A stretch of DNA of 64,000 bases from Macrostomum lignano (lineage: Eukaryota), in assembly GCA_002269645.1 (NCBI GenBank), contig NIVC01000930.1, forward strand, positions 310,001 to 374,000, given 5' to 3'. Of this stretch, positions 3,001 to 60,298 are shown piece by piece. The notes beneath the pieces are model-generated. The model was not told the origin of the DNA and did not search any database. It worked only from the letters and a program-made list of their open reading frames with translations. Within the stretch, counting starts at the first letter, position 1, and each line of letters starts with the position of its first letter. Both the position numbers and the translations under genes were made by a program.

Positions 3001-4734
3001 GCTGGTCTTGACTCCTAACTCTCTCTCATCGTCAGCTGGTCTTGACTCCTAACTCTCTCTCATCATCAGCTGGTCTTGACTCCTAACTCTCTCTCATCAT
3101 CAGCTGGTCTTGACTTCAGCTGGTCTTGACTCTTAACTCTCTCATCATCAGCTGGTCTTGACTCTTTACTCCCTCTCATCATCAGCTGGTCTTGACTCCT
3201 AACTCTCTCTCATCATCAGCTGGTCTTGACTCTTTACTCCCTCTCATCATCAGCTGGTCTTGACTCCTAACTCTCTCTCATCATCAGCTGGTCTTGACTC
3301 CTAACTCTCTCTCATCATCAGCTGGTCTTGACTCTTTACTCTCTCTCTCATCATCAGCTGGTCTTGACTCTTTACTCTCTCTCTCATCATCAGCTGGTCT
3401 TGACTCCTAACTCTCTCTCATCATCAGCTGGTCTTGACTCCTAACTCTCTCTCTCATCATCAGCTGGTCTTGACTCTTTACTCTCTCTCTCATCGTCAGC
3501 TGGTCTTGACTCCTAACTCTCTCTCATCATCAGCTGGTCTTGACTCCTAACTCTCTCTCATCGTCAGCTGGTCTTGACTCCTAACTCTCTCTCATCATCA
3601 GCTGGTCTTGACTCCTAACTCTCTCTCATCGTCAGCTGGTCTTAACTACTGGGCTATAAGTTCACTACTCATTAGTAGTACGTAGAAAGGCGGCACCATA
3701 CTTTTAGTCTGGTTGAAGACCTACCAAATCTATGGAATTTCAGGCGGCATTCTGCTTGTCTATTCGACGTTCTCGAACGCCGAAAGCGTCGGTTCGAACT
3801 CCACAGCCACCGACGGAGCCGGGCCTCCCATAGTGGCAGTTGACTTAAGAACCGGCAACCGTCTGAACGACTATCTGTCTGCTAGAGGACGAGCGGGTGA
3901 CGGCAGCCCAGCCCGCGGCTGCTTGTTCGTGTCGCCCTACGGAGATTTCGTTCTGCGCGTGTCTGGCCAGCGCATCGTGGCGTACAAAATCCGACCGAAT
4001 GGTGAGTCGCATGGGACAGACTGAAGCTGCAGTGCGCTGTAAGCTCAAGGGAACTAAAAAATACTTTACATCTATCTCTCTCTCTCTCCCTCGGACTCAC
4101 TGCTGACCTCAGCGCACTCTCAAACACTCACTGCTACCCTCAGCACGCTCTCAAACACTCACTGTTACCCTCATCACACTTGAGACACACTGTACACCCA
4201 GGAAAGCTTACGCTTCCAAGAATTTCAACTCCGTGAACGGAATAACCTGGCAAACAAGCGCCTACCGAAATGTAATCCTAAATTTAAAAAATCCTTTTAA
4301 TCACAGGCAAATTGGCTCCAATATTGTCCGACACAGCTGGTGTTCGACTTCGTAGCGTCGCTTTCCACCGAGGCACGGACGCGAAGCAGCGCGTTCTCGC
4401 TGTCACTAACAGGCCAGGCTGTCTGCTGACTGTCTGGCTGGAGAAACAACAATTCCAGCTGACACTGGGTAGGTCCGAGAGGGACAGAACGGGACAATGG
4501 GAGAGGCAGAGCGAAACCTTAAGCCAAGCCCATCTCCCAATTCCAGATGAGAGCTTCTCGGACAAATCGGTCGTCACAGCTCCGGTCTTCGGCGACCGCG
4601 CCCTGCTGCACTCGACTGACTCGGCGCAGTTCCTTCGGACAGATCGGCAAGGCGGAGTTCAACCCGCTGCCGGCGACGGGTGCGGCAAGCGGCTCTTTCT
4701 GCAGCTGCAGCAAGCATTATGGCTGATCGACTGA
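1..4734 (+). CDS. 3' part of a gene encoding an Ig (I-set-like) domain followed by a probable beta-propeller (NHL/WD40-like) region; exons <1-124, 1917-2582, 3744-4001, 4307-4734
   Basis: Bases 1-124 translate as HWLHISNLDRNHTGIYSCRVENMAGASEVAGSLYVRNPAEN, the Ig C-terminal pattern LxI..D.G.Y.C.V.N..G, ending at a gtgagt donor. All three introns are GT-AG and phase 1, and they join ORFs 1919, 3713 and 4312 in frame to the TGA at 4732-4734. The downstream exons are rich in short beta-strand/turn segments. The propeller call is pattern-based. Confidence 0.7.
205..1050. repeat. 14-bp minisatellite (TTTGACTGTCACAA)n, ~60 copies, intron 1
   Basis: Directly visible tandem array with few variants; each unit contains the palindrome TGAC-T-GTCA. 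Confidence 0.97.
2635..3645. repeat. ~33-bp minisatellite (CTCTCTCTCATCATCAGCTGGTCTTGACTCCTAA-like), intron 2
   Basis: Directly visible tandem array with a variable-length CT tract and CAGCTG in every unit. Confidence 0.95.
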
Positions 4735-8243: not shown

Positions 8244-10675
8244 ATGGATAGCGAGCGAAACAACGACGGGATGAAGGAACTGCTGAGGGGCTTTGCTAGC
8301 CGGACCACGGCTCACGGAGTCCAACGGCTGACGATGGGCCTGAAGATGCAGCGCCTATTCTGGCTGATCATCATCCTGGCTTCCTGCGTCGGCTTCAGCG
8401 TGCACCTGAACGGGCTGGTCAGTCGGTACCTCAGATATCCGGTGACCAGCGAGGTTCTAACCGGCATCCGGGACATCCAATTTCCATCTGCGACCATCTG
8501 CTCAACGGACAATGTGCCTAGAATGTTTTTCGACCAGGGCATCCAGCCGCCTGACAATCTCAATCCAGGTGGGGAATATTGGCATTATTACTACGCTCGT
8601 ATTATTATTATTATTACTACTATTGTTATAATTAGTGTAAGGGGGTTGTGGGCATCTTAGCGCAAAGCTCTTGGCAACAACAATACGAGTATTCCAATAC
8701 GAGTTACGAGGATGATACATACATTTACATTATATGCAAGGACCAATGCATATTTTTGACTCAGAGAAAATTCTAAGTAAACAAATAAGGTCTTAGAATT
8801 AAAAAAATGATAGTAATTAACATCAGCTTCCTCTACAATTCCGCTACAGGCTTTATCCTTATAATTTCACAGTGTAGGCACATGATAGTCATACAACTGC
8901 CACCACTGCTGGGTCCTATAAAATTAGAATTGCATTAGCTCATGGTTGAAATTGCATTTTTGCTGAGGTGTGATTTCAAACCTTTAACTTCTCCCTAACG
9001 CCATCCAGGTAGTCCAAGAAAGGCCAGGTCGATCATCCTGGATACGGCCAGGCTCTACTATCAGCTGCGAATGCTCAACTCCAGTCTGAACCCGCTGGTC
9101 ATGCATTGGCCAAATGAAACCTTCGACGATGGCCGATTCGCTGCCAGAAAGATCGTCGGCGGCATGAGGGACAGCTTCCAGCAGCCGTACGAGATCGTGC
9201 TGAACTGCCGGTTCAACTCTCAGCCCTGCAGCTACGAGAACTTCACTGTCTACAGAGACGAACAGATGTGAGCATGTGAACTTGTTTTCAGGGTCTGTTT
9301 GCCCAACCTTAGCGGGGCAGCCAAGGTCTCCGCGCTTAGTTTAAGTGCGGGCAGAATGTGACGCGGTTCTCCGCCGTTTCCTTCTCTAGACCAACAACAA
9401 CAACAACAACAAAGTAATTCAACCGCCAACCACTCAGTGGCCAGAAAGGGGGAAGTCAGAGTGAGCGTCTCTGGGCCATAGCCCTCAGAAAGTCACACCC
9501 CCCAGCTTGGTCCGGTCGTATCCTGGTACATCGCCATGATGGCGGAAATCAGTTGCTCCGGTACATTGTATGCGCTCTAGATCACAAAAGAGGCAAATGG
9601 AGGAGCAAACGCTTTGCATTGAAGTAGCTCGCATGCCTCTAAAAGGAGCCATGATCAAGGATATTAGGTATTTGATCGAATACCTTCCGGTTTATAACAG
9701 GCATCGTCTTACAGATACGAACAGATGTGAGCTTTAGAATTTTATTTTCAAGGGGACTGGCGATGACTTCTGACTAGCAGAGGTAGTTAAGTATAATCAT
9801 TCTTCCGACCGATTCTTCGGAGCATTCAGACGCACTCCTGACGTTTAAATAAACTCTTCAAAATTCCATATTAAGGTACTACTGTCTGACCTTTGACCCA
9901 CCCAATGGCACTGTGGCTCGCCCAGACGTCGGCAACGGCCTGTACATGGTTCTGATGGGGGTGAGCGACTCCCTACGCTCTGATGACGAGCAGGCCGAGT
10001 ACACTGCTGGCTTCCGGATTGCTCTGCACGACAAAGGTGAGGCTTTTGATTCTGGTCCGCTCTGTAAACTTCAAGCAGTGTCCGAATTCAGATGCAAAAA
10101 GCCTACGAGCAAGTAAACACAGCTTGCGGATCTCCTTCAAAGCAACTTCCAGGCAAGTGAATTCCATCAAGTCTGAGAAAATTCTGTTGCTAACGAATTT
10201 TTTAATCGAAATTGGCTTTAAGTCAACATCCAAAGGGATCTTCACAGTCCTCGCACAACGCCTTCTGCGACATTGTCACACAACTAGCGCTGAGGCAATT
10301 GGTCCTCGCGAATGTGAATCGATGATTTTCTAAAAAACACTTCAGGCGTGAAACCGGATCTATCAATGGCTTCGTTCATGGCCCCTTACGGAACCAAGAC
10401 AATGGCAAAGTTCTCCGTGCACTCCTTTGAGCGAATCAACCGGGCCAATTCTCCCTGCGAGGACCAGCTGCCAAATGCTGAATACACTGAGGTCTACTCA
10501 TCACCTACTCCGAGCGGATTCGAGCATCGGACCTTCAGAGGCTGGACGCGCGACTGCGAGTGGCGCCGAATGCAGGACGAGTTCGTGTCCGAGTGCGGCT
10601 GTCTGGCCTCGCACCTGCCGCTGCCCAGAGACCTGATGGAGAGCGGCTTGAGGCCGTGTCACGATGGACTTCCTG
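8244..10675 (+). CDS. DEG/ENaC (ASIC/FaNaC-like) sodium channel, 5' part (exons 8244-8568, 9009-9267, 9876-10036, 10346-10675); exon 4 is interrupted by the transposon
   Basis: Family motifs FASRTTAHG (HG motif), TM1 (RLFWLIIILASCVGFSVHL), YPV..., FPSATICS, NCRFNSQPC..ENF, YYCLTFD, GL..VL, AGFRIALHD and a Cys-rich ECGC region. Splice phases 1, 2 and 1 all join in frame. Confidence 0.93.
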
Positions 10676-10698
10676 CCCGATTGAAAATCGGGGGCCCC

Positions 10699-11250
10699 AT
10701 CGGCACTGACTGCCGACGGATCGGCACTGGTCTGTCGGCACTCAGAGTGTCCGGTAAAGTGGCTCATATCGGCACCGACGGTCGGTACTGTCGGTACTGA
10801 ACATCGGCACTCGCCGTCGGCACTGACCTAGAGCCTTCGCCGCACCCTCGCCCATTCGCCGTCGGCACTCATGTCGACACTCCCGTCGGCACTCATGTCG
10901 GCACTCCCATCGGCACTCCCATCGGCACTCATGTCGGCACTCCCGTCGGCACTCCCGTCGGCACTCCCGTCGGCACTCCCGTCGGCACTCATGTCGGCAC
11001 TCCCGTCGGCACTCACATCGGCACTCATCGACACTCCCGTCAGCACTCCCGTCGGCACTCAAATCGGCACTCATCGACACTCCCGTCGGCACTAAATCGG
11101 CACTCATATCGGCACTCAAATCGGCACTCATCGATACTCCCATCGGCACTAAATCGGCACCCCTGTCGGCACGTAGGCCCGTAGGCCCGTATATCGGTAC
11201 TCCCATCGGCACTCATGTCAACCCTCATATCGGTACTCACATTGGCACTC
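10699..11250 (+). repeat. Left subterminal repeat array of the transposon ([AG]TCGGCACT motif)
   Basis: Dozens of GTCGGCACT/ATCGGCACT copies immediately inside the left TIR, as expected for CACTA subterminal protein-binding repeats. Confidence 0.9.
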
Positions 11251-12269
11251 ATTGGCCCTCGTGTCGGCTCCCATATATCGGAGGCATTTTGTGTCGTGAA
11301 TCAATGGAATAGTTAATTACGTTATTAGTGTAATGGCAAAATTATATTAAAATAAAATTAGACCTGTGGACGTGAGACAGCAATTTAACTCCAGCATCAC
11401 TGAATCACCGTACACGTACCACGTACATGTATCCCCTATCGAGCATGCGTTCCATAAAGAAGTGGCAGGCAATGCAGGAAATATGGACAGAACAGTGTAA
11501 TTGTCACATAGATGGTGGCCAAAAGTAGATACATGTATAAATATTACCCATTTATTTGGATGACTAGCCTTGTAAAGGCTCGACAGTTGACCGAGGCGAA
11601 AGCAGAAGGGAATTGGTGCCAATCGACAACTGTTGCGTGGGGATGGTAGGCAACGAATTATTCACGTATAAAAATAAACAAATAATAAAACAGAAACTGA
11701 ACCCTGCAGAGAGACTCGGATTTTGGGCACACGTACGCGTGCTATGTGTTCTGTTAAAAGGAAATGACACACAATTTAATAAAATGCTGCCCCTTCGCTT
11801 GCTACTACAACTACTACTTCTACTACTACAGCTAGCGTCTACCTACTTCTGGAAGTAACTGGACCTACGTTATACTTTGCTACTTATATTACTAATCACT
11901 TATAGCGGGACCTCCAAATACCATCCGACTCCCATAAATGTCTGAGGTGGGGTGGGGTTTGAGGTGGATGCTCGCATCGGAAATGTAAGCGGGTCTTTGG
12001 TGGTCATTACGGTATAAGCAGGTGCAAACTAATGCTCAAAACTTAAAACTTAAAACTTAAACGTAAAAGCTTAAAACTAACTTCTTAGCTATAATGCTAT
12101 ACGCATTTAGAGTAATGCTAGAAGAGTAAGGAAACTAAGGCTATATAATACTTTTTTCTTCAAGGGTCTATCAATGGCATCGTGGACGTTACGTGGTCCC
12201 CCAACTGTGCTAGGAATTATACTTCAATACTTTAATTAAACATACAATCCCCGCGTCCTAGACCCCGAC

Positions 12270-14476
12270 TTAGGCCCCTAGATCGCTGTCGCCCTTGTCG
12301 CCGTCGACATGGGCCGTGTCGCTGCTGGGGCCAGTGCCGCTGCCGTTGCCAGTGCCGCTGCTGGGGCCACTGCCGCTGCTGGGGCCAGTGCCGCTGCCGT
12401 TGCCAGTGCCGCTGCCCTTGCCAGTGCCGCTGCTGGGGCCAGTGCCGCTGCCGTTGCCAGTGCCGTTGCTGGGGCCAGTGCCGCTGCCGTTGCCAGTGCC
12501 GCTGCTGGGGCCAGTGCCGCTGCCGTTGCCAGTGCCGCTGCTGGGGCCAGTGCCGCTGCCATTGCCAGTGCCGCTGCTGGGGCCAGTGCCGCTGCCGTTG
12601 CCAGTGCCGCTGCCGTTGCCAGTGCCGCGGCCGTGGCCGGTGCCGCTGCGATGGCTAGAGGCCGGCCGGCTGCTATCGCTCTTATGTTTTTTGCTGTTGT
12701 GGGTGCCGTGGCCAAAAGCCGACTTTGAATGACGGCTGTCGTCCTCATCAACACCATCGGGCCTGCTGCGCTTGCTGCTCTTCCGGATGGAAGCGCCGTC
12801 CCCGCTGGTGGGCGCCTCCTTGTCGGTCCGCCTTCGCTTCTGATGCTGGCTGGCACTGCCGGCGTCAGCATCAGCCTGATCATCAGCAGTTCCGGTGGCA
12901 GCGGTGGGGTTCTGATCGTCAGGCCTGCTGTTGGCCTTGTTAGCGGATTCGCGTTTGGTCTTGTTCCTGCATGCGGTGGGCGTGGAAGATTAGGAAATGG
13001 AAAGTGCATCTAATTAACTACATATCGACAAGCATTCCAGGAATCCTTTATTCCCAATCATATGGCATACTGTTGTTTAAGCAGTATATAAGGCACGTAG
13101 TGCACTATTACAGTATTATATTACCGTAGTTATGCAGCCCATATAACCATTGCCACTGCTACCCTTTGTACTAGTGCTACCACTTTTATGATAGAACACC
13201 GTATTCCTTACCGCAAGGTGACCTCCTTCACTGCGCCGAAAGCACGCCCCAGCAGGCAGGTTCCACTGCTGGGGTCCGTAGTCGGAACTTTGACGTCGCT
13301 TAGGAAGGCAATAATGGCCTCCCTTTTGGCCTCAGGGATGGGCGGCAGGTTTCTTCCGCCGTCCCACTGGCGACCGGTGAAGGAGCAATTCAGCTGCTCC
13401 TCCTCCGTGAAAACTTCACGACAGAGAAGGCGCAGAAGCGCCTTCTGGCTCGTCTGCGTTTTTTGCCTATGGAACGCTGCTACGGTGCTGCGCATCGGGC
13501 CGAAGAAACTGTGCCTAACAAAGACAGCCGGGTGAGACCCTACTAGCGGTACCAACTCATCATCCGAGTTCCTCGCCGTCTGGGATGCTTCGTCCAGCCT
13601 TGGGAGCGCACACCGCATGCTAGCCGCGACCGTCGATCGCAGTGCGCCACTCAAGCTTCCAAGCCGCGAATCCGCGGGCGCCGTGGCACTGGCCGTGACG
13701 TCTACCATGTCCCCGCCTCCCACAGAGGCCATGGATGGCATCTGAAGTGTGTGATCTGCGATCTTCATACCACACGACTCATCACTGGACGCGATTGCTG
13801 CAGCTGTCTGCTCCATGAGCTCCTGTTGAGCACTTCCCAGGCAAACAGCCGTCTTGTGCATGGCCTGCAGCAGCGTCTGCTGTATCGCCGTCACCGCTTT
13901 GAGCTGATCTGCCGATCGACGCCAGCGCTCGTAGAAGACGTCATGAGCACCTTGCTGTTCAGCGTCCCCCAGCTGTTCCAGCTCCTTCTTCGCCACGTCC
14001 AGCTCCGAACGCAGTTTTTCCACCTTTCGCTCCAGGTCCTCCACCACAGCACTGTGGACCTCCCGCTGGGACTCTTGCAGGTCCTGCATCTGGCGGAGAC
14101 GCGTCTTCAGGGTGCCAACCTCCTGCCGGTAGCTGGCGCACATGCTGCAACCGTCGTCCGGGAGGTCAACAGCGCCACTGGCCACCAGGAACTTCTTCCG
14201 GAATTTCCCAAGCTCCTTTAGGGCTGTATTCCGTGGACCAGCAATTGGTCCGTGTACCAGTTCGACAGCTTGCGCCTTGCTTCGCTGGCTAGTACGGGCC
14301 TCTACGTGCTGCCCTTCCGCATAGGGGCCGCTGCCTGACGTACCTTCGGCCTTGATGTACTCCTCAGAGAACAGGTCGTTTTCGCCGGCGCTGCGTCCGG
14401 CGAGAATCTTGCCAACCCAGTAGCGTGGAAATTGTTGGTCATTAGTCGTCGTACGCTTGCGTCTGGCGTTCAGCAT
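12270..14476 (-). CDS. Transposon-borne coiled-coil + BEN-domain protein with a Gly/Ser/Thr-repeat tail (exons 14476-13212, 12966-12270)
   Basis: ORF 14476-13208 has an N-terminal beta-rich segment, a CSMC motif, a long heptad region, then LVPLVGSHPAVFV...KALLRLLCREVFTEEEQLNCSFTG...LPPIPEAKREAIIAFL, a BEN-like pattern. A phase-2 intron (CG|gtaagg...catgcag|G) continues in frame as RNKTKRESANK...QKRRRTDKE...(GTGNGS/GTGPSS)n...DLGA* to TAA at 12272-12270. The start codon is uncertain and an upstream exon is possible. Confidence 0.75.
12318..12640 (-). repeat. 18/36-bp coding tandem repeat within BEN gene exon 2 (encodes GTGNGS/GTGPSS)
   Basis: Alternating GCTGCTGGGGCCAGTGCC / GCTGCCGTTGCCAGTGCC units on the plus strand. 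Confidence 0.9.
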
Positions 14477-14596
14477 TTTCTATGGGCGTAACTTGCAGAC
14501 GCTTGTTCTAATCAACGCTGCTTCGAAAAGTGGTGGTCCGGGTGCTGGAAAATCGGATATTGAGGCGTCACTTGTAGATTCATGCCTGTCAGTAAG

Positions 14597-14738
14597 CAGT
14601 GTTGGGCACTAACTAGTTAAATAGTTTACTAGTTATTAACGAAGTTAGTGTTTCACTAACTTTTAGCAGTTTTCCGTTACTTAATTTCTTTTCAACGAAC
14701 CTAATGCCCCCCTTAAAAAATTGCTGGCTGCGCCACTG

Positions 14739-14788
<50 letters not shown>

Positions 14789-15081
14789 CCTCTCTATCTC
14801 TCTCTCTCTCTCGCTCTCTCCCACTGTCTCTCTCTGTCTTGGTCTCTCCCGAAATTGGGCCATTGGCACAAAAAGTAACAGAGGAGAGGATGCGGAGAGG
14901 AAAAATGAACTAAGTACTTTGTATTACTACAGTAATATGCGGAAAGTTAACTTTTTAACTTAAGTCACTTTTTTCTGAAAAGTTAAAAAGTTATCCAAGT
15001 TAAGTTACTTTTTTTGCCAGTTAAAGTTAACTGTTTAACTTTTAACGAAGTTACTTTTCCAATTAACTTTGCCCAACACTG
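14597..15081. mobile_element. Non-autonomous hAT-type MITE nested in the CACTA element
   Basis: 12-bp TIRs CAGTGTTGGGCA (14597-14608) / TGCCCAACACTG (15070-15081), an exact 8-bp TSD TCAGTAAG (14589-14596, 15082-15089), internal AAGTTAAC/AAGTTACT-type repeats and a CT tract. Confidence 0.92.
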
Positions 15082-16194
15082 TCAGTAAGTAGGTATGCAC
15101 ATTATATTAAGTTGTGTATAGCTGCTGCTAATATTAATAATATTTTAAGACTTTTGAGCATATCATTTAGGAGAACATATAATAAGACTTGCCTATACTA
15201 TGGCTTATATTAAGAGTACATAATAAGACACCTGCCTATACGCAATAAACGTTCTCGACCGCATGTATTACCTACATACCTGGAAAGGTTGTAAGTACCC
15301 TAAAACAAAAGTGTAATAAGTACACCCCGATTGAAATTTCTTAGTGGGTACCTGTAGTAGTACGTCCCCTCCCCTCGATCAGCGCTATTTTAGAGTCTGT
15401 CAGCGTATTGAACCCGTGATGTAAGTTGCGAAAAACGTAATTACAGTTTTTTTTATTTACATCGGTTGTCATTCGCAGATTACATGTCGCCACTTGTTAC
15501 CTAATATACAGTAACGTACATTCAGATCTACGCTATTACACGTCATCATGCCCTCCACTACTACACGCCTTATGCTGCACCAAATGACCCCATGTAGCTG
15601 TGGAAGACATATGGAAGACATGGAAAAGATAATGGACAACACGAAACGGAAGCAGAAATATGTGAGCTGTCCCTCAGCCGTGCGACCGCTCTCGCCCTTT
15701 CATGTCATACGAACGTTTATGTGGAAATGCATTTGTGGAAGTACACCGCATGTGCTGTAGTACGCACTAGGCGAGACGCCAAAACTTCGGTTTTTAGTAA
15801 AGTGCAGTAAATGCATCGTAGCACGATATTTATATGCAGTTCATCGAGGGCACTGTAAATAGGGGGAAGGAGATCGGTACATCCATTACACTACTGTCTT
15901 AAATGCTGCGTCGAAATGCGACAGATGTATAGCTGTGCAAGATAAGACGTGCGTGGGAGACATGGAAACAAGAAAGGATGACCGGTATGTCAAAAGTAAT
16001 ATATATGGAGAAAAACTGGCACTGTTGCTGTGCGCACGTGGCAGGACGCCAAAACCGCACTGTCATACTGTACAGTAAATGCATAAATGCAAGGTAGCAC
16101 GATATTTATATGCAGTTCATCGAGGGCACTGTAAATAGGGGGAAGGAGATCGGTACATCCATTACACTACTGTCTTATGCTCACGTCATCACTG

Positions 16195-18341
16195 TCACCG
16201 CCCCATATTGGCTAGCTCCGGCAAATCAATGCGCAGATGAATGTCACGATTTTTGTTCACGACGGCAGCGGCGTGGTGCCACATTTCAATGTTACTCGTG
16301 GGCAGTTCCGTCCAACGGATGTAAACTTCCAACAGGCTCGGGCATTCCCTGGCCAGCAGCGTCAGACAGTCCGGCGTAACGGCGGTGCCATCGAGCCACA
16401 GCCAGTTAAGGCTGGTCGCGACGGAACAGGTGCACAGACGCGATAGACTGCCATCGTCGAGGCTGGGGCAGTTTGCGAGCGTCAGTTCGAGCATTGCAGC
16501 AGAGGCGTGGTCGGCTGGACGAATACCTGCAGGAGGGAGAGTCTCCCAGGCTTTGCCCGTCACCAGCCGACAGTCCAACAAGTGCAGGCACTGCAGCTGT
16601 GGCAGCGTGAGTAACAGACAGGCCACGAGACTGTCGTCGCAGGCGGGCCACGAGATAGTCACGTGAGTCAGGCCTGCGTACGGATGGAGAAGTGTACATA
16701 GTAGCGTCCAGTGTGCAGTGTGTAGGTCTAGAGCGGAGGCGTGCGCACCATACAGGATGAACATGCATGCCTCATAAAGACTAAGACTAACGTCACGTGC
16801 ATGCACATTTGTGCGTCAAATGTAATATGCACCACACTCACCACGACATCCGCCGAGAGCGGTCGCGAATGCAGGCTCACCGACCCTGATCCCGCAAGCT
16901 TCGTCGGTGGGCGTGACGTAAAGCTGCAGCACTCGTAGCGACGGAGGTAGCCGAGTGCCACGGAAAACGTCGGCAGACCCGGCTGGCGCGTCCGGACTGG
17001 CAGCTATCTGGTATCTCAGCCGCGTCAAGTCGGGCAGCTCCTGGCAGGCCAACCGGAAGCCCTCCGCGCCCAGACTGAGGCAGTGGACGAGGCTTAGGCT
17101 TTGGAGCCCAGGCCAGCACTTCAGCAGTTGCCGCAGGCCCCACACGGTCAGCTTGTCGCCTGCGTCCAGATGCAGGTGACGCAGGTTGGCGCCCTTGAGG
17201 CCGACTCGTGCAGCAATTTGACCGGCGATGGCATCCGTGACGACCTGGCTGTGCACGGTCAAGCGCTGTAGCTGGTCTCCCTGCCCGCTGATGATGTCGA
17301 GCAGCACTGAGAGATAAGGAAGGGTGCATTTCGTCGTTAAAACGCATTCATTATTTAGAAAGAAATTAATGGTTGCACACAATTCCCGGAGAAGGCCTAT
17401 ACGTAATTACTAAGCCCACTACGAAGTGACTATTTTTAAATGGATTGTAACAACATGCCTCGTGTAGCCCTGGCCGGAGACGGGGATGCCGGCGGGTCTA
17501 GGGTGACCTCACGCAGCCGGGTGAAGCGGCACCAGCCTGTAGCGATGGCCGCTGCTACGGGACCAGCTGAAGTGGCAAGCATGTCTGCGCGGACATGCAA
17601 CACCTGTAGGAATGCCGGAGAAGGGGGGGGTGAAGTTAATAATATTAATACATAGACAGCCATCTCGACTAAAAGGACTGTGCCATGTGACATGAGAACG
17701 TATGTGACATGGGTCATATGACCTTACTGTTTGAGCAATTATACATGCCGTATTACCTGTATGCGGCCCAGCAGTCGGCAAAAGGGTGCAGCGCACTGTG
17801 CGACGTCGCCACCAAAGATTTCCTCGCCGTCTGTCAACAGCTCCAGCTTCTCCAGTCTGGGACAACCGTCGCTCAGACTGGCCAGCGCCTCCGGGTTGAA
17901 GATGCCTGGGCATTCTGCCAATGATAGCTCCCGCAGTTGTAGGCAACTGCGACCAGCCACCGTGAGGAGGTTTGGGCCGCCGGTGTACTGGCCCATGTCC
18001 AGCAGGCGGAGCGTACGCAGCTCGCCGCAGCGCAGAAGGAGCGTGGCAGCGCGGTCGATGGCGATCGCGCTAGGCGGCTCGAACACGGTGCCCAAATCTA
18101 ACTCTTTCGCCGCCGTCGCCAAGGTCATGAGCCGTGCCGCTGTGCTGTAGTCGTCCAGTGCAGTGGCGGTGACAGGCAGTCTCTCCCACAACACTGGTGC
18201 GCGGACGACGTCTGCCCAACGGCGGCATACTTGTGCGCACACCAGCCGAGTGGGTACCGTGAGGTGCTGCAACACCTGCATGAGCAACTCCGACGGCAGC
18301 ACGTCAATGGTAGGTGGGGCACGGCCGGTCGATGACTGCAT
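16195..18341 (-). CDS. Transposon-borne F-box/leucine-rich-repeat (FBXL-like) protein, ~575 aa (exons 18341-17757, 17603-17459, 17306-16842, 16727-16195)
   Basis: Classic F-box IDVLPSELLMQVLQHLTVPTRLVCAQVCRRWADVVRAPVLW, followed by Cys-containing LRRs (LRELSLAECP, LEKLELL, LRHLHLD, LQSLSLVHC, LELTLANCPSLDD, LNWLWLDGT). Splice phases 0, 1 and 1 join in frame (total 1728 nt). The intron-2 donor (GC) and the last acceptor are the least certain parts. Confidence 0.88.
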
Positions 18342-19275
18342 CGCTCGGCAGTTCGGCGGAGCTGTAATCCACATGCGAGGGACGGGGTTCAAATAAACTT
18401 GATTACTGTATTAATGCAGTACTGCAGTAATGGATTAATGCAGTACCGTAAGTTGTACGGTAGGTTCATGTGCAGTTCAGCTTTTGTTGTTGTTGCTTTT
18501 AGGGAGAAGTCGTACGAGAAAATGGAGCAATTCCTGTACTAATTTGTAGTAGTAGTAGTTGTTGTTGTTTCTGCACAATATGTTTTACACTATATTCGAA
18601 GACATGCAAAACATGGACAGCTGCCGTATACCGTGCAAGAGAAACAAGGAATAGGAAGTTCCGTGAAGTCGTTTCAATTCTTAAAATAACGAGACGTGCA
18701 GCAGGTGAAGTAGAGTGAACAGCGGTTGGGAGCGGTGTATTTAACAGACAGTACAAGAATAGTATAAGTAACCCAAACAAAAGTTTACAGACAGTAATAT
18801 TACGTAATAGTATAGGCACTTATGCACTACATACAGCACATCGCTATATACACAATAATAACATTCTTATACTAGCTGCAGTATTCATGCCACACTATAT
18901 ACAACGTTGTTATATGCTAACAATATTCTTTCCTTCGAAATGCAATCTAGCCAGCAGGCCTAAAGCAGACAAAAACCAAAGCTAAGCCCCTGCACACAGG
19001 CCTACAGTGGACAGATTATGAACAGTTAATGACTTTTCCTTTTCCCTTGTCTCTTTCATGGCCTTCCCCGTACTTCCAGATGTCACAATGCAACAAGTCA
19101 AACAAAAGCATTAAGAAGAGACAGCAGAGAGGCCGACAGCAGAAGCAGGTGATGACAGTAGTCGTCCGGAAGGCAGTTGTGGTGGCCTGGGGTCTGGCGG
19201 GACGGCTCCCCGGGCTACCCCTGCTTTGAGGAGCTCCAACTCCTACCCGCAACCCCTGACTGCTCTTTATCTCTT

Positions 19276-19328
<53 letters not shown>

Positions 19329-19609
19329 ATCCCAAGACCCAGCCGCTCTTCCCCAGACCCAGACCCGGCCACTACGGCCCCAAGACCCAAGACCCAGCCC
19401 CCATGCCTGCTGAGGCCTGTTCTAGTGCGTTACTCACTGTTGGACTTGAGGGGGCCGAGACCCCATAAATATACTAGCCTTGGGAGCCTTCGCTCCCCAA
19501 GGTTCGTCTCTCTCTGTTTGTGCCCATGCATCGGGAAGCCATTTCCCCTCTGGCGATACTGCCTTAGAATCCTACCGTGTTCCGACTTCATACACAAGTC
19601 ATGAAAGCA

Positions 19610-19702
19610 GTCCTGCAGAACGATGGGCGCATAGGCAATCAGCCATATTTCGGATTCGTGCCCACGGAACTTCTTCAGCTCGCGCAGTGTGCGCGTTCCA
19701 CG
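19610..19702 (-). pseudogene. Isolated relic of a second, divergent EnSpm-like transposase
   Basis: RGTRTLRELKKFRGHESEIWLIAYAPIVLQD aligns without gaps to RGPRTLADLGHFRGHEFECWLLVYGPMVLGD of the main transposase (19/31 identical by eye); the flanking sequence does not align. Confidence 0.75.
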
Positions 19703-20330
19703 CAGTTCAACGCTACGGAATCCGCCCTGCAGGGCAGATTCAGACCCAAGAATCTGCCCTGCACAGCAGATTCCTTTTAGGCAGAAAAAATTCAATGGAA
19801 TCCGCGACGATTCCACAAGGAATCGCACCAGGAATCCGTCATATTTCCCAGCGGGATATAGGGGACAGATATATCTATAGACATGTAGCTACGGATCACT
19901 GGTAGATACTTGCCATTGTCTGAGTAAATATAATATGCAGACGTACAAAAGGCGTAAACTAAGAGGTACGATAAAGTACGATAAAGAGGTACGATTAAAG
20001 AGGTACGATAGACAGCTGATGAAAGTTACACATCTTCGTGCATATTACGTTGTCATATATATATACTCGTCCTTGAAGGTGGCCATTGGAAATACAGATC
20101 GAGAAAAGTGACAAACATGGCTAAATATATGCACAGAATAGAAGCAGTGCCGATCAGGGACAGCAGCAGCGGAGGTGTACACACTGATCTACACACTTGT
20201 CCTCGTCGGAGTAAATGTGAGAATACGGGATGGACAGAAGTCGGGCTGCGGACAGTCGGAGACACTAGACATGGATTGCAGTTGTCTGACACACTTGTTC
20301 GGCAAATCTTCGGCACTTGCCGCCCGCCCA

Positions 20331-23300
20331 CTAGGCGGCGAAGGAGGTTTGCACGTGCGGGAGGAAAGCTATGTGGGTGTCAGTTACACAGCATGTGCCA
20401 AGCACGTCCACCACGGGGAGACAGAAGTGCATGCCGCCGATGTCGCCGAATGGGTTGTCGACGACGCGCTGAATGTGCCTCAGTCGGCAGCCGTCGTTCT
20501 GTGCGACGCCCGAGATGTAGTATTCCGGGTCCAGAAGGCAGACGGTACGAAGGCGACGCACCATCAGGATTGCAGTCCCGCGGGTGGGGGACCTGCGGAT
20601 GGCGTCGACGCGACCGAAAGCCAGTTGGACACCGTCGTCACTGGCGGCGAAGGCGACGAAGCAGCACAGGGACCGCTGGTGCTGTAGCGCGGGCAAGTAG
20701 CGCTCAATGCGCCATCCGTTGGTCAACAGAGCCCAGCGGAACTCGTCGTCATGTAGCTTGGTGTACACCCTGGTCCCGTCGGCCATGGTCTCTTGGACAC
20801 CCTGAAGGAATCCACGGGCCGCAAAGGGCGAGGCCAGGCCCAACTGGTGCATGACGGCACGCCTGCTGAATTGCCGTCTGATGGCAGAGTGCACCTGAGT
20901 GAAATGAAGGGTGGGAGGCGCCCGTTGCAAGTTAGGTAACGGTCTGATGCAGCAACGCAAGCCCTCGGAGGGGAACATGGTATCAAGGGGGAACCTTTGT
21001 AATTATATATACCACGATAACCCAGGGGGTGGGTTTCTAGTGCGATACAAGAGTGGGCATCCTGCATACGTACTGACTACTAGTGAGTAGAATATAGAGG
21101 CGTAGATGCCATTATACTATATTTTTCTAATTAGAGAAAAGGGTCTCTCTGCGTACCTGATCACCGACGAACCTGGCGCCCTTGACGCGCGTTTTGAGGC
21201 CGTAGTGCAGAGACTCGAACAGGCCGGCGGAGGTGCGCCACACGGGTCCGAAGAGAAAGGCTGCGGGAACGAGGTGCTCACAGACCTGGTGGGCATTGTA
21301 GGTCATGGCGGCCGGCGAAAACCCATCCTTCAGGCTGGCGTAGAATACTCGCAGGGTCTTCGCTGCACGAGTAACTTCCGTCAGCGGGCAGTTCTCCAGA
21401 GACAGCCAGAAGATGGAAGAGGACAGGAGCAGCAGTTGATTGTAATAGAACGGTCCCAGCGTGTCGCCGAGAACCATGGGGCCGTACACCAACAGCCAGC
21501 ACTCAAATTCGTGCCCGCGGAAGTGGCCGAGGTCCGCCAGGGTGCGAGGGCCCCGCTGGTGCGACGCAGGCACTCGAATACTGGCCGCCTTGGCGTCCAC
21601 TTCAGCCACATGGCGGGACAAGTCCGGGTTCTCGGCCATCTTGTCAGGTCGCTTGCCGACGGGCAGAAAGTGCTGCCGCAGCAGCCAACCGACAACGCCG
21701 ACGAGGCACTGATGGAGGTAGCAGGGCGGGCAGGAGGTGATGAAGTCGAAGCCCTGCAGCCGATGAAGAGGAGACAGCCTGACGACGCCGAGGTTGTGGC
21801 CTGCGCCCGCCGGAATCGTGGTCGCCAGGAGGATGGTGTCCTGCAATGCCCGGTACCGCGGCCGTGTGCAACCGGCGTCGGATGCTGCTTGCAGCGCGTC
21901 GGCCGAAAGCTCGCATGGGAAAATGCGCGCATTTCCTCCGCGGTCGGCATCATGGAGAGTCACGGTGTAACAGTGATCGCAGCCGTACACTGCTGAGCAG
22001 TGCTGTAACCCAGTCACCTCAACCCTCTGAGGCGCGTCAAGCACGAAGAGGAGCGGATGGAAGCGGATGCAGCCGCCACGCGTGCCGTCTCGTCCACCAC
22101 CTGTGCGGAACATAACACCCTCGATGCGAAGGCTGTTCAGCTGGGCCACCAGCCACGGCAGGAAGGCGTCCACGCTCACCTTGTTCCTGCAGGCCCACAG
22201 AGCGCAGACCACCGTGAAGCGCGCTCGCATGTGGTCGGGGACCTCATTCACGGTAAGGTACACGGGGCAGATGTTGTACACCGCCCGGCTGAACACGGAA
22301 AATGCATCGATGTTGACCGTGACCGTCAGATCTGAGCGAGCGGCCTTGTCAATGAGGTGCGTAAAGGCCGAGTATGCCGTGCTTTGCCACAAGCTCAGAC
22401 CACCCGGCCGCCGCGTGACGTCCGCGGGGAAGGAGACGACCGACAACAGGCCGCAGCGCTCAATGAGCTGCCGTAGCTGGGCTCGCACATCCATCCGCCA
22501 GACCTTGGCGACGCGGTCCACTGACGAAAACTGCTTTCCGCAGGGTTCGCAGGTCAGTGGAAGGGCCTCCTCCACCAGGGGCCGGCTGCACCTAGGACAA
22601 AAAAGAAGTCGTTCGGAGCGCAGGGAGTTGCAGGACTCCAGAAACCGTCGCAGGCGGTACGGGTTGTCGGCAAACACGGCGTCTGGGGGAAGCGCGAGCT
22701 TCGTGTAAAGCAGCAGGTCCGCCGTGGCGTTTCGCGACAACTTGTGCTTCTCGGCTAGGAGCTCTCCGTACACTGCCAAAGTGGCGTATGACAGGTGCGG
22801 CATTGTGCGATGCACCGGTTGCAGAAACCCTGGCGCGATGTGAACGACGCCGTCGTCGCCGCCATGGGCTGCCCCTTCGTCGACAGCACCGCTAGCACCG
22901 CCAGCCCCGTCGCCAGCACCGCCAGCCCCGTCGCCAGCACCGCCATCACCGTTGACACTGTCAGCGGATTCCTCGATGACGTCGTCCCATAGCGCACCCT
23001 GGCGGATGGAAGAGAAAGGGTAGGAAGGGGAGGAAGGAGGGAATCATAACTAGATTGGTTCTAGGCAGCCGATGAACATTGCGTGCTTAAGTTTGCTGAG
23101 TGCTAACTGATATTTGCAGGCAGGATCACATCAGCCACGTATACGCACGAGTGCCAGCCTTCAACAGTACAATGCAAGCCTTACGTCATCACCGTCATCA
23201 TCAGACGTCGCATCGCTGGGGTCAGGACTGCGGTCGGATCCGCGGCCAGAGGCTCCATCGGAGCTGCGGTCAGACCCACGTTCGGAGTCGCAGTCGGATC

Positions 23301-23895
23301 CGCGGCCAGAGGCTCCATCGGAGCTGCGGTCAGACCCACGTTCGGAGCCGCAGTCGGATCCGCGGCCAGAGGCTCCATCGGAGCTGCGGTCAGACCCACG
23401 TTCGGAGCCGCAGTCGGATCCGCGGCCAGGGGCTCTATCGGAGCTGCGGTCAGACCCACGTTCGGAGCCGCAGTCGGATCCGCGGCCAGGGGCTCTATCG
23501 GAGCTGCGGTCAGACCCACGTTCGGAGCCGCAGTCGGATCCGCGGCCAGAGGCTCCATCGGAGCTGCGGTCAGACCCACGTTCGGAGCCGCAGTCGGATC
23601 CGCAGCCAGGGGCTCTATCGGAGCTGCGGTCAGACCCACGTTCGGAGCCGCGGTCGGAACTGCAGTCAGAGCTAGAGCTGAAAAGCTCAGCAGGACCGTC
23701 AGATGAGGCAACACCACCGGCATCGTCCTCGTCATGGTTAGCTGCACCTTGCATCGAACTAGATGCTGCGGCTTGGCCAAACTGCAGCACACGCATGCAC
23801 TTACTTGCAGCTGCAGCTGCACGCCGATCGGACCGACAGACTGCCTCCAGCTTTCTCTTACGGTCGCGCGCTTTGATATGTTTGGCAAAGTCCAT
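20331..23895 (-). CDS. CACTA/EnSpm-family DDE transposase, ~1038 aa (exons 23895-23185, 22998-21157, 20894-20331)
   Basis: Motifs typical of animal EnSpm/CMC transposases: CPRC/CEPC zinc pairs, VTVNIDAF (first D), CPVYLTVNEVP..MR, FVLDAPQR (second D), YGCDHC, CYLH (C/D-x2-H), RGPRTL..L.HFRGHE, TYNAHQVCEHL and FGPVWRTSAGLFES (E). Both introns are GT-AG and phase 0, with no stops or frameshifts. Exon 1 has seven 60-bp repeats (SDCGSERGSDRSSDGASGRG). The start Met (MDFAKHIKARDRKRK) is a best guess. Confidence 0.9.
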
Positions 23896-47580: not shown

Positions 47581-47902
47581 AGGCAATTTGTGAGCGTAGT
47601 TATGTGTAGCCTGTACGCTGGATGCTTTCGGTTTATGACAGCGTGAATACTGCTTGAGCTTTCTAGGATTGTCATCTGTGCCTAAGGGGTCGTAGTGGCA
47701 TTTACTGAAACACCTGAGAGAATAGTGGCACCCGCTGAAGGAACTGAAGGAATGGTGGTACCCGATGAAGTAACTGAGGTGGTAGTGTCACTCACTGAAG
47801 GACCTGAGGTCGTAGTGTCACTCACTGAAGGACCTGAGGTCGTAGTGTCACTCACTGAGAGGACCTGAGGTCGTAGTGTCACTCCCTGAAGGAATGGCGA
47901 GA

Positions 47903-48456
47903 CCCGCTGAAGGACCTGAGGAGGTGACAGCACCCACTGAAGGGCCTGAGGAGGTGACAGCACCCACTGAAGGGCCTGAGGAGGTGACAGCACCCACTGA
48001 AGGGCCTGAGGAGGTGACAGCACCCACTGAAAAGCCTGAGGAGGTGACAGCACCCACTGAAAAGCCTGAGGAGGTGACAGCACCCACTGAAGGGCCTGAG
48101 GAGGTGACAGCACCCACTGAAGGGCCTGAGGAGGTGACAGCACCCACTGAAGGGCCTGAGGAGGTGACAGCACCCACTGAAGGGCCTGAGGAGGTGACAG
48201 CACCCACTGAAGGGCCTGAGGAGGTGACAGCACCCACTGAAGGGCCTGAGGAGGTGACAGCACCCACTGAAGGGCCTGAGGAGGTGACAGCACCCACTGA
48301 AGGGCCTGAGGAGGTGACAGCACCCACTGAAGGGCCTGAGGAGGTGACAGCACCCACTGAAGGGCCTGAGGAGGTGACAGCACCCACTGAAGGGCCTGAG
48401 GAGGAGAAGACAGCACCCACTGAAGGGCCTGAGGAGGAGAAGACAGAACCCACTGA
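47903..48456 (+). repeat. 30-bp tandem repeat (CACCCACTGAAGGGCCTGAGGAGGTGACAG)n; open as (APTEGPEEVT)n
   Basis: Directly visible, with degenerate related units from ~47690. Coding status is unresolved. Confidence 0.9.
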
Positions 48457-50698: not shown

Positions 50699-50829
50699 TG
50701 GCGACCAAGGGGAACATAAAATTTCCCCTGGCTTAGGGCGTCATGCAGTTTTACCTTATCGGTGATTTCTGATTATGCAAGAAGTTCCTGTTTTGAAACA
50801 TTTTATCCACAGCGCATGGATAAAAACAT

Positions 50830-59894: not shown

Positions 59895-60298
59895 TTTTGC
59901 ATTATTAATCATCAAATGGATCTCAAAACATAAATGTTCGCATGTAATTTTTTTCGCCTTGCAAGACCATCATATGTCCGAATTTAGAAAAGTAAAAAAG
60001 TCCGCGCGCTACTTTATCCTCGGATTTTAGATGTCATAGCTTGGATATGCACGGCATCACGAATTTTGCCTGTATAAAAACAAGACAGATTGGAGTCGGC
60101 AGAGTATTTAGCGTACCGTACAATAATATGAACAATGTAATATAGTAGCTGCATCTAAAAAGCAAATTTACTGACAAGGGTACGCGCGTTCGTTCCAATT
60201 GCTTCAAGGAAATATTAATTCAAAGGCCTCCAAATAATTTCAAGTAGTTTTGTTTCAATTTACTTGCACTTCAATTCAACTGATCGGCTATGTAAATA

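What the first reader, a model, noticed from the sequence alone, without database searches (positions are those of the whole stretch)
16195..18341. Intact F-box/LRR gene as transposon cargo - a mobile ubiquitin-ligase adaptor
The gene is complete, with 4 exons, a canonical F-box and multiple LRRs, so it is not a decayed Pack-type fragment. F-box proteins recruit substrates to SCF for degradation, and viruses use them to destroy host defence factors. A transposon-encoded one could target silencing proteins (piRNA/Argonaute, chromatin) or the element's own transposase. Alternatively, transposition may drive expansion of the host F-box family.
Basis: partly seen in the sequence, partly recalled or inferred. 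Interest (0 to 1): 0.8.

Follow-up and report, generated by a model that had tools for sequence, protein, structure and literature searches.

The report
Flatworm DNA transposon carrying F-box gene
A complete, transcribed gene for an F-box/leucine-rich-repeat protein (the part of a ubiquitin ligase that picks its targets) rides inside a recently active 14.3-kb cut-and-paste transposon of the flatworm Macrostomum lignano, so a mobile element may be carrying its own protein-degradation adaptor, though what it targets is unknown.

Summary
Window 16195-18341 (minus strand) is an intact four-exon gene for a 557-aa F-box/LRR protein (568 aa from the upstream ATG at 18374). Pfam F-box-like scores E=1.2e-12. 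The AlphaFold model (pLDDT 88.7) shows an F-box plus about 18 LRRs, and its best structural matches are TIR1, FBXL2, MAX2 and COI1. The window is Macrostomum lignano contig NIVC01000930.1. GenBank's transcriptome-derived annotation covers exons 1-3.

The gene lies inside a 14,292-bp DNA transposon (10676-24967). The element has perfect 14-bp TIRs (CCCGATTGAAAATC), 3-bp target-site duplications (CTG, GAT and TAA at three loci) and inverted arrays of subterminal repeats. It carries three same-strand genes: a CACTA/EnSpm-like transposase, the F-box gene and a coiled-coil protein that UniRef names BEN-domain-containing. At least five different loci carry it at 97.5-99.9% identity.

The F-box coding sequence is identical in five copies, so dN/dS cannot be computed. 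Its nearest relatives are Macrostomum-specific F-box/LRR host genes (33-36% local identity, one intron shared in position and phase). Those genes sit in ordinary, transposon-free loci.

The cargo claim is supported. The proposed function (hijacking SCF against a host or element protein) is untested. I rate it a new variant of a known kind, of moderately high interest.

The parts
10673..10675 (.). Target-site duplication CTG, left copy
   Evidence: CTG flanks both ends in the window. Other loci have GAT/GAT (L001) and TAA/TAA (L004).
10676..10689 (+). Left terminal inverted repeat CCCGATTGAAAATC
   Evidence: This is the exact point where homology among the L001, L002, L004 and window copies begins. 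It is a perfect 14-bp reverse complement of 24954-24967. Of 100 shuffles, 0 gave 3 or more matches at up to 2 mismatches.
10700..11212 (+). Left subterminal repeat array (motif TCGGCAC, 12-nt unit CGTCGGCACTCA)
   Evidence: 29 TCGGCAC motifs lie at 10700-11206. TRF finds a period-12 array at 10860-11130 with 23 copies.
12270..14476 (-). Third gene: coiled-coil protein with basic and G/S/T-rich tail. The 653-aa isoform has exons 14476-13212 and 12966-12270. A 605-aa isoform is annotated in other copies.
   Evidence: Annotated gene in L003 and in L001, L002, L004 and L008. UniRef calls the 100%-identical P0125 a 'BEN domain-containing protein'. There was no Pfam or PDB sequence hit here.
16195..16673 (-). 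F-box/LRR gene, exon 4 (ends with TGA at 16197-16195)
16842..17306 (-). F-box/LRR gene, exon 3
   Evidence: The GenBank partial model ends inside this exon, at about 16900.
17459..17603 (-). F-box/LRR gene, exon 2 (followed by a GC-AG intron)
17757..18374 (-). F-box/LRR gene, exon 1. The F-box is residues 12-55, counted from 18341.
20331..24045 (-). Transposase gene. Exons are about 23895 (first Met; frame open from 24045)-23185, 22998-21154 and about 20897-20331. The product is about 950 aa. It carries D376, D466, C(2)C at 485-488, H(4)H at 715-720 and E740 (P0002 numbering).
   Evidence: P0002 = BOX15_Mlig033474g1, 946 aa, 100% identical. Exon mapping is, motifs. There was no Pfam hit.
24645..24951 (+). 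Right subterminal repeat array (motif GTGCCGA, 13-nt unit CAGTGCCGACGGG), inverted relative to the left array
   Evidence: 15 GTGCCGA motifs lie at 24647-24945. Copy number varies between loci.
24954..24967 (-). Right terminal inverted repeat (GATTTTCAATCGGG on the + strand)
24968..24970 (.). Target-site duplication CTG, right copy

Best explanation
Shown: the interval is an intact, transcribed gene for an F-box/LRR protein with the full architecture of an SCF substrate receptor. It is one of three same-strand genes inside a 14.3-kb CACTA/EnSpm-like (CMC-type) cut-and-paste transposon of Macrostomum lignano. That element has recently inserted, with 3-bp target-site duplications, at five or more unrelated loci. 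The gene descends from a Macrostomum-specific F-box/LRR family and was taken up as genomic DNA, since its introns are retained. It is now the most divergent member of that family and has no close host donor. Inferred: it is a maintained accessory gene of the element, not dead freight. Its F-box docks on host SKP1-CUL1, and its roughly 18-repeat LRR solenoid brings a protein to be ubiquitylated. The target is either a host factor that restrains the element (silencing, chromatin or repair) or one of the element's own proteins (dosage control). The coiled-coil/BEN-like protein would play the TnpA-like role of binding the subterminal GTGCCGA repeats.
For: Gene integrity and fold. Canonical F-box residues (LPxELL...VCRRW...LW) align with the SKP2 and FBXL2 F-boxes. 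Transcription: the GenBank models derive from RNA-seq and transcriptome assembly, and transcripts overlapping annotated repeats were removed (PMC5730564). Models exist for all three genes. Transposon: identical termini at each locus, a 14-bp TIR, TSDs CTG/GAT/TAA, and flanks that are unrelated between loci. One copy sits inside an intron of a Cys-loop receptor gene. CACTA-like features: 3-bp TSD, inverted subterminal repeat arrays, CCC termini as reported for animal CACTA-related elements (PMC1636069), a motif I match with 2 substitutions (19 of 2000 shuffles), and C(2)C and H(4)H between the second D and E (PMC12730594). Linkage: the F-box gene is present and open in all five aligned copies, including the 12.7-kb deletion derivative L001, whose two deletions fall only in spacers. 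Long separate history with a preserved frame: a scan of 1.84 billion proteins finds nothing closer than 33-36% local identity, and all hits below E=1e-12 are M. lignano proteins. Global identity to paralogues is 25-31%. One intron is shared in position and phase. Precedent: CMC and other DNA transposons carry TET/JBP genes proposed to counter silencing (PMC12730594), and giant viruses encode F-box/LRR proteins.
Against: There is no direct evidence of SKP1 binding or of any substrate. All copies are near-identical, with 0 substitutions in 1674 nt of coding sequence, so selection within the element cannot be measured. I could not scan the genome for older or F-box-less relatives. The donor gene could simply be unannotated or lost, in which case capture might be recent. 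The transposase has no Pfam Transposase_21 hit, and the motif evidence is only moderately specific: the loose composite pattern matches 10% of shuffles. Exon 4 lacks transcript support in GenBank. Copy L008 has two 1-bp CCC-to-CC deletions in the coding sequence, which may be real or PacBio errors.
Confidence: 0.5

Rival explanations
1. Neutral passenger. A whole host F-box/LRR gene was picked up by the transposon by accident, as in Pack-type or transduplication events but complete. It is copied along with the element and does nothing for it. It looks intact only because the current burst of copies is very young.
For: The copies are 97.5-99.9% identical and the coding sequence is identical in five copies, so nothing shows purifying selection inside the element. 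CACTA-type elements are known to pick up host DNA (PMC6379663, listed). The host has a large, fast-evolving F-box/LRR family from which a donor could come.
Against: No donor-like host gene exists in the NCBI or UniProt annotations: the nearest protein is 33-36% identical locally and 25-31% globally. The lineage is therefore old, yet its frame, splice sites, canonical F-box residues and a confidently folded 18-repeat solenoid are all preserved. The gene is transcribed. It is kept in the internally deleted copy L001.
Confidence: 0.3
2. Host-serving gene amplification. The F-box protein works for the host as another member of the expanded Macrostomum F-box/LRR family. The transposon merely raises its copy number and disperses it, a route to family expansion or incipient domestication.
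For: The nearest relatives are host genes of a lineage-specific multi-copy family, with names running to g10 in one group. The element contributes at least six extra copies.
Against: The four paralogue loci inspected have no transposase, no BEN-like gene, no TIR and no subterminal motifs. One is a tandem triplet, so the host family grows by ordinary duplication. The TE-borne gene is the outlier of the family. All known copies are still inside apparently complete elements.
Confidence: 0.12
3. Not a transposon at all. The repeated 14-kb block is a segmental or assembly duplication of an ordinary host locus in a redundant, partly polyploid assembly.
For: [quoted passage not shown] L005 is such a duplicate of the window locus, with the same flank and the same CTG. 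L008 has non-matching flanks, CAG and TCA.
Against: Homology in L001, L002, L004 and L008 stops at exactly the same base at each end. A perfect 14-bp TIR sits there, with different 3-bp direct duplications at three loci and completely unrelated flanks, one of them inside an intron of another gene.
Confidence: 0.03

Closest known systems
CACTA/En-Spm (CMC) DNA transposons, including the flatworm element SmTRC1 of Schistosoma mansoni
   Same: 3-bp TSD (as in plant CACTA), short TIRs, many subterminal repeats in inverted orientation at the two ends, and large size. There is more than one protein and alternative splicing, with 605- and 653-aa isoforms of the third gene. TIRs begin with CCC, as reported for animal CACTA-related elements (PMC1636069). 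The transposase has the D...D, C(2)C and H(4)H...E layout.
   Different: No Pfam Transposase_21 match. Motif I has A for G and C for W. Termini are not CACTA. SmTRC1 makes 2-bp TSDs, is 4.5 kb and has one ORF. No CACTA element that I found in the literature carries an F-box gene. The second protein here is coiled-coil/BEN-like and has no detected similarity to TnpA (not directly compared).
Fungal DNA transposons that carry TET/JBP dioxygenase genes (KDZ, EnSpm, Plavaka and others; PMC12730594), and VANDAL21 with VANC in Arabidopsis
   Same: A cut-and-paste element carries, besides its transposase, a complete accessory gene that could act on the host's control of the element.
   Different: Those accessory proteins act on DNA methylation or bind the element's DNA. 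This one is a ubiquitin-ligase substrate receptor in an animal, with no tested activity.
F-box proteins of viruses (polerovirus P0, nanovirus Clink, poxvirus Ank/PRANC; giant-virus F-box/LRR proteins)
   Same: A selfish genetic element encodes an F-box adaptor to borrow the host SCF ligase. Giant-virus F-box/LRR proteins are the best structural matches in the viral library. The P0, Clink and PRANC functions are from my own knowledge.
   Different: No detectable sequence relationship. Those are viruses, not transposons. P0 and Clink have minimal F-box motifs without LRRs.
Pack-CACTA / Pack-MULE gene-fragment capture, and telomeric retrotransposons of Drosophila auraria carrying fragments of an F-box gene (PMC13534243)
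   Same: Host-derived coding DNA inside a transposable element.
   Different: Those carry fragments, usually in non-autonomous elements. Here a whole gene with introns, an open frame and a confidently folded product sits in an element that also encodes its transposase.
Cellular F-box/LRR proteins (FBXL2, SKP2, FBXL17; plant TIR1, COI1, MAX2)
   Same: An N-terminal F-box followed by a curved solenoid of cysteine-containing LRRs. These are the best structural matches and the best PDB sequence matches.
   Different: Not an orthologue of any named FBXL. Sequence identity to the PDB structural matches is 12-20%. The only moderately close relatives (33-36% local identity) are Macrostomum-specific. 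The gene is located in a transposon.
Caenorhabditis F-box genes that captured a Tc1/mariner HTH domain (PMC12062965)
   Same: An evolutionary liaison between F-box genes and DNA transposons.
   Different: The direction is opposite: there a host F-box gene captured a transposase domain, whereas here a transposon carries a whole F-box gene.

Membership tests
F-box/LRR (FBXL-type) SCF substrate receptors | N-terminal F-box domain | tested here: met
   Pfam F-box-like E=1.2e-12 (47.8 bits, cut-off 24.3) and F-box E=2.8e-9, residues 12-55. It aligns to the SKP2 and FBXL2 F-boxes with LP, ELL, VC(K/R)RW and LW conserved.
F-box/LRR (FBXL-type) SCF substrate receptors | C-terminal leucine-rich-repeat solenoid | tested here: met
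   The AlphaFold2 model has pLDDT 88.7 and pTM 0.87, with about 18 alternating strand/helix units from residue 54 to 548. Foldseek's best hits are TIR1 (E=2.9e-17), FBXL2, MAX2/D3, COI1 and FBXL17. Pfam LRR models score only below threshold.
F-box/LRR (FBXL-type) SCF substrate receptors | Binds SKP1 and assembles into an SCF ligase | not testable with these tools
   Inferred only, from conserved F-box residues.
F-box/LRR (FBXL-type) SCF substrate receptors | Orthology to a named animal FBXL | tested here: not met
   An exhaustive phmmer scan of 1.84 billion representatives gave only 5 hits below 1e-10, all M. lignano. Other animals score 1e-8 or worse and only over the F-box plus the first repeats.
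CACTA/EnSpm (CMC) transposon superfamily | Short TSD (3 bp for EnSpm; 2-5 bp for the wider clade) | tested here: met
   CTG, GAT and TAA duplications at three loci. The range is stated in PMC12730594.
CACTA/EnSpm (CMC) transposon superfamily | Termini 5'-CACTA (or CA..TG) | tested here: not met
   Termini are 5'-CCCGATTG...CAATCGGG-3'. CCC termini are reported for the animal CACTA-related elements SmTRC1, Aedes and Tribolium (PMC1636069).
CACTA/EnSpm (CMC) transposon superfamily | Multiple subterminal repeats, inverted between the two ends | tested here: met
   29 TCGGCAC motifs near the left end and 15 GTGCCGA motifs near the right end.
CACTA/EnSpm (CMC) transposon superfamily | Transposase with Pfam Transposase_21 domain | tested here: not met
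   No hit at E<=10 for the whole protein or for three sub-fragments. No homologue other than itself in the word-indexed search.
CACTA/EnSpm (CMC) transposon superfamily | Conserved motif I of DeMarco et al. 2006, and D...CxxC (motif III) | tested here: inconclusive
   Motif I matches at residue 369 with 2 substitutions (G to A, W to C); 19 of 2000 shuffles match as well. D466...C485xxC488 is present, and the D-D spacing is 90 against about 80 in the paper. Motif A is not matched (PMC1636069).
CACTA/EnSpm (CMC) transposon superfamily | [quoted passage not shown] | tested here: inconclusive
   CDHC at 485, HQVCEH at 715 and E740 lie in the expected order. However, a loose version of the pattern matches 10% of shuffled sequences. 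The structure model was unusable (pLDDT 36).
Pack-type (gene-fragment-carrying, non-autonomous) transposons | Cargo is a gene fragment and the element lacks a transposase | tested here: not met
   The cargo is a complete gene. The element encodes an open three-exon transposase in the window copy.
BEN-domain proteins (third gene of the element) | Recognisable BEN domain | tested here: inconclusive
   UniRef names the identical protein 'BEN domain-containing'. Pfam gave no BEN hit at E<=10, and PDB sequences gave none.

The most novel reading that the evidence does not exclude
This would be the first transposon-encoded E3-ligase adaptor in an animal. An active CACTA-like element carries its own F-box/LRR substrate receptor, which hijacks host SKP1-CUL1 to destroy a host factor that restrains the element, for example a PIWI-pathway, chromatin or DNA-repair protein in neoblasts or germline. 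This would be analogous to polerovirus P0 destroying AGO1. The carried gene would then have been evolving rapidly in an arms race, which would explain why it is the most divergent member of its family.
Probability: 0.25. Interest if true: 0.85.

Novelty: new variant of a known kind. Interest (0 to 1): 0.62.

Why it matters
Eukaryotic cut-and-paste transposons are usually thought to encode little beyond what they need to move. The few known accessory genes (TET/JBP in fungal elements, VANC in VANDAL21) have been very informative about how elements fight host silencing. A complete ubiquitin-ligase adaptor carried by a young, multi-copy and apparently autonomous element would add protein degradation to that repertoire. 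That strategy has so far been documented for viruses. Macrostomum lignano has RNAi, transgenesis, characterised PIWI/piRNA pathways and accessible germline and stem cells, so the idea can be tested directly. Even on the dull reading (a neutral passenger), this is a clean animal example of a DNA transposon mobilising a whole intron-containing host-type gene. It also flags that GenBank annotates three genes of an unrecognised transposon as ordinary host genes.

Tried and rejected
1. The generic repeat finder on the whole window was swamped by minisatellites. Self-BLAST found no long inverted repeat around the gene. The termini came only from comparing copies.
2. Pfam on the ten longest window ORFs, on the 946-aa transposase and on three transposase sub-fragments gave nothing useful.
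3. Word-indexed homology searches for the F-box protein, the transposase and the third protein returned only the element's own products. The '69% identical' P0126 is the same protein with an internal deletion, not a diverged paralogue, and it is not on record in the contig index.
4. A single-sequence AlphaFold model of the transposase core was unusable (pLDDT 36), so I ran no fold search on it.
5. dN/dS among copies is impossible, since there are no substitutions in the coding sequence. The apparent frameshifts in the transposase of L001, L004 and L002 and in the F-box gene of L008 are all 1-bp homopolymer length differences. They cannot be told apart from PacBio errors.
7. I asked whether the host paralogues are also carried by this transposon. 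They are not.
8. PDB sequence search for the BEN-like region gave no hit.
9. Rfam on the element gave no hit.
10. No paper mentions the gene identifiers, and the held supplements of the genome paper have no expression data for them.
11. Four literature searches for an intact F-box gene as transposon cargo found none.
Full report
**1. What is in the interval**

On the minus strand of window 16195-18341 there is an ATG at 18341 and a TGA at 16197-16195. Four exons join into a 1674-nt open frame encoding 557 aa: 18341-17757, 17603-17459, 17306-16842 and 16673-16195. Introns 1 and 3 are GT-AG. Intron 2 uses a GC donor (GAG|GCATGT).

A word-indexed search of 5.8 billion proteins returned one hit. 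It is the 100%-identical GenBank protein BOX15_Mlig022939g3 of Macrostomum lignano (P0001, 390 aa, partial).
- This model confirms exons 1-3 and both introns, including the GC-AG one.
- It starts 11 codons upstream, at the in-frame ATG 18374.
- It stops inside exon 3.

Exon 4 therefore rests on other evidence:
- The reading frame continues.
- The intron position and phase are shared with a paralogue.
- The exon-4 product is the part best conserved with paralogues.
- The structure model is continuous across it.

The GenBank annotation of this genome comes from a genome-guided transcriptome assembly. Transcripts overlapping annotated repeats were removed from it (PMC5730564). The model is thus evidence of transcription. 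It also shows that the element was not recognised as a repeat.

**2. What the protein is**

- Pfam gives F-box-like E=1.2e-12 and F-box E=2.8e-9 for residues 12-55.
- The closest solved proteins by sequence are FBXL2 and SKP2. The alignment shows the canonical LPxELL...VC(K/R)RW...LW residues.
- An AlphaFold2 model built on a 38-sequence alignment is confident (pLDDT 88.7, pTM 0.87). It shows the F-box helices followed by about 18 strand/helix LRR units running to residue 548.
- Foldseek places it with SKP1-bound F-box/LRR receptors: TIR1 (E=2.9e-17), FBXL2, MAX2/D3, COI1 and FBXL17.
- In the viral library the best matches are giant-virus LRR and F-box/LRR proteins.

The observation of a complete gene with a canonical F-box and multiple LRRs is confirmed.

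**3. The transposon**

The exact 390-aa protein is encoded on six contigs of assembly GCA_002269645.1. The window itself is NIVC01000930.1, since L003 matches window 6900-28374 at 100%.

BLAST of the window against the other loci shows a shared block from about 10673 to about 24850-24967 at 97.5-99.9% identity. Flanks are unrelated in L001, L002 and L004. L005 is a duplicate of the window locus, with the same flank. Aligning the edges gives exact ends:
- The element is 10676-24967, 14,292 bp.
- It begins CCCGATTGAAAATC and ends with the perfect reverse complement.
- It is flanked by 3-bp direct duplications that differ between loci: CTG in the window, GAT in L001 and TAA in L004.
- L002 has a run of N at one end.
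- A further locus, L008, has non-matching flanks (CAG/TCA). This could reflect recombination between copies or a mis-join.

Inside each end lie arrays of a short motif, inverted between the two ends. There are 29 TCGGCAC motifs at 10700-11206 and 15 GTGCCGA motifs at 24647-24945. In L004 the element sits inside an intron of a Cys-loop receptor gene. These features exclude a segmental duplication and show cut-and-paste insertion.

**4. The other genes of the element**

All three genes are on the minus strand.

Transposase:
- Upstream of the F-box gene is a three-exon gene: about 23895-23185, 22998-21154 and about 20897-20331.
- Its 946-aa product is annotated once, as BOX15_Mlig033474g1.
- It has no Pfam hit and no detectable homologue in the word-indexed search.
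- A single-sequence structure model failed.
- It does match motif I, published for CACTA-related transposases, with two substitutions (19 of 2000 shuffles do as well).
- It has the D...CxxC motif, with a D-D spacing of 90 (PMC1636069).
- It has C(2)C and H(4)H between the second D and a downstream E, as described for the EnSpm-Mirage-Chapaev-Transib clade (PMC12730594). A loose form of that pattern is matched by 10% of shuffles.

I combine this with four other features: the 3-bp TSD, the subterminal repeats, the CCC termini reported for animal CACTA-related elements including a schistosome one, and the multi-gene layout. On that basis I call the element CACTA/EnSpm-like. Membership by sequence is unproven.

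Third gene:
- Downstream of the F-box gene lies a coiled-coil protein with a basic and G/S/T-repeat tail (14476-12270). It is annotated as 653- or 605-aa isoforms.
- UniRef names the identical sequence 'BEN domain-containing protein'. Pfam and PDB searches here did not detect a BEN domain.
- By analogy with TnpA, it is the candidate binder of the subterminal repeats. This is inference.

**5. State of the copies**

A five-way alignment of the copies has 62 variable sites. None falls in the 1674 nt of F-box coding sequence and one falls in its introns.
- The F-box gene is open in all five copies.
- L001 is a 12.7-kb derivative with two internal deletions (18818-20112 and 14952-15714). Both lie in spacers, so all three genes survive.
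- Differences in the transposase ORF of L001, L004 and L002, and two in the F-box gene of L008, are all 1-bp homopolymer length changes. In a PacBio-based assembly these cannot be told from errors.
- In the window copy all three genes are open, so it could be autonomous.

**6. Origin of the cargo**

An exhaustive phmmer scan of 1.84 billion representative proteins found only five hits below 1e-10. One is the gene's own product. The other four, and several weaker hits, are M. lignano proteins from multi-copy groups. These groups are Mlig026428, Mlig029821, Mlig022867/004250, Mlig030928 (copies named up to g10), Mlig001195 and Mlig001907.
- Local identity to them is 33-36% and global identity 25-31%. 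These host paralogues are 26-44% identical to each other, so the transposon-borne gene is the outlier.
- Four paralogue loci (L006, L007, L009, L010) have ordinary neighbours. They contain no transposase, no third gene, no TIR and essentially no subterminal motifs.
- L010 holds three paralogues in tandem.
- The third intron of the transposon gene (after residue 398, phase 1) falls in exactly the same alignment column and phase as an intron of P0006.
- The second intron (after 243, phase 1) lies within a few columns of phase-1 introns in P0006 and P0105.

The gene therefore shares ancestry with a Macrostomum-specific host family at the DNA level. It is not a retrocopy, and it has no close donor among annotated genes. 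That argues for an old separation with a preserved frame and fold. I could not show that the separation happened inside the transposon.

**7. How it most likely works**

Shown: a complete SCF-receptor-type gene is physically part of a recently mobile transposon and is transcribed.

Inferred: it is a maintained accessory gene whose product docks on host SKP1-CUL1 and ubiquitylates a protein chosen by the LRR solenoid. The target would be either a host factor limiting the element or an element protein. I give this 0.5.

The rivals are:
- A neutral whole-gene passenger (0.3).
- Host-serving amplification (0.12).
- An assembly or segmental duplication (0.03), which the TIRs and TSDs contradict.

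**8. Comparison with what is known, and novelty**

Four literature searches found no intact F-box gene described as DNA-transposon cargo. The nearest items are:
- F-box gene fragments in Drosophila telomeric retrotransposons (PMC13534243).
- The opposite-direction capture of a mariner HTH by Caenorhabditis F-box genes (PMC12062965).
- TET/JBP accessory genes in fungal DNA transposons, including EnSpm (PMC12730594).
- Viral F-box proteins (and my own knowledge for P0, Clink and PRANC).

I rate this a new variant of a known kind: a CACTA-like element with an unusual, complete accessory gene. Interest is 0.62. The structure is solid and directly testable in a tractable animal, but the function is unproven.

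Noticed in passing
window 15326-15339 (inside 14952-15714): A third TIR-like sequence, CCCGATTGAAATTT (2 mismatches, same orientation as the left TIR), lies between the third gene and the F-box gene. It sits inside a 763-bp segment that is absent from copy L001, and contig L005 ends at that segment's edge. There are no subterminal repeats next to it, so it may be chance or a relic of an older end.
   Followed up: partly
window 19610-19702 (inside 18818-20112): A 31-aa stretch 61% identical to transposase residues 627-657 lies in the spacer between the transposase and the F-box gene. It is within a 1.3-kb segment deleted in L001, and L002 and L008 lack 19811-20172. It may be a relic of an internal duplication or of a related element.
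   Followed up: no
window 15796-15901 and 16074-16177: A 106-bp direct repeat (96% identical) lies immediately 3' of the F-box stop codon. It may be a duplicated 3' UTR or polyadenylation region.
   Followed up: no
L008 9053-22906 (NIVC01002297.1): This copy has non-matching 3-bp flanks (CAG on one side, TCA on the other). L002's resolved flank is CAG in the same orientation. This suggests recombination between two copies or an assembly mis-join.
   Followed up: partly
L004 2667-21475 (NIVC01001499.1): One copy of the element sits, on the opposite strand, within the span of a Cys-loop ligand-gated ion-channel gene (Neur_chan_LBD/Neur_chan_memb). It is presumably in an intron.
   Followed up: no
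L010 10031-10168, 17349-17915, 20001-20528 (NIVC01001389.1): Three host F-box/LRR paralogues lie in tandem within 10 kb. This shows that the host family expands by local duplication.
   Followed up: partly
window 12312-12649 and 23233-23658: Coding minisatellites lie inside the element's own genes: an 18/36-nt unit in the tail of the third gene and a 60-nt unit in the transposase N-terminus. Both vary in copy number between loci.
   Followed up: partly
window 204-1050, 2642-3647, 25523-27257, 27777-31097, 32557-33136, 36123-37329, 38075-39574, 46249-47049, 47688-48456, 49586-50360, 50824-51625, 53527-53953: The window outside the element is unusually dense in tandem repeats and minisatellites. 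Examples are an 8-nt unit over about 1.7 kb and a tandem duplication with a period of about 1.04 kb. Many of them create long spurious ORFs.
   Followed up: no
window 58443-59894 (+): A 483-aa single-exon ORF with many hydrophobic segments, which looks like a multi-pass membrane protein. It had no Pfam hit at E<=0.01.
   Followed up: no
window 43757-43887 / 44014-44146 and 60296-60441 / 60670-60817: Two pairs of roughly 130-150-bp inverted repeats (94-95% identical) separated by about 130-230 bp. These are possible MITE-like or hairpin elements unrelated to the finding.
   Followed up: no
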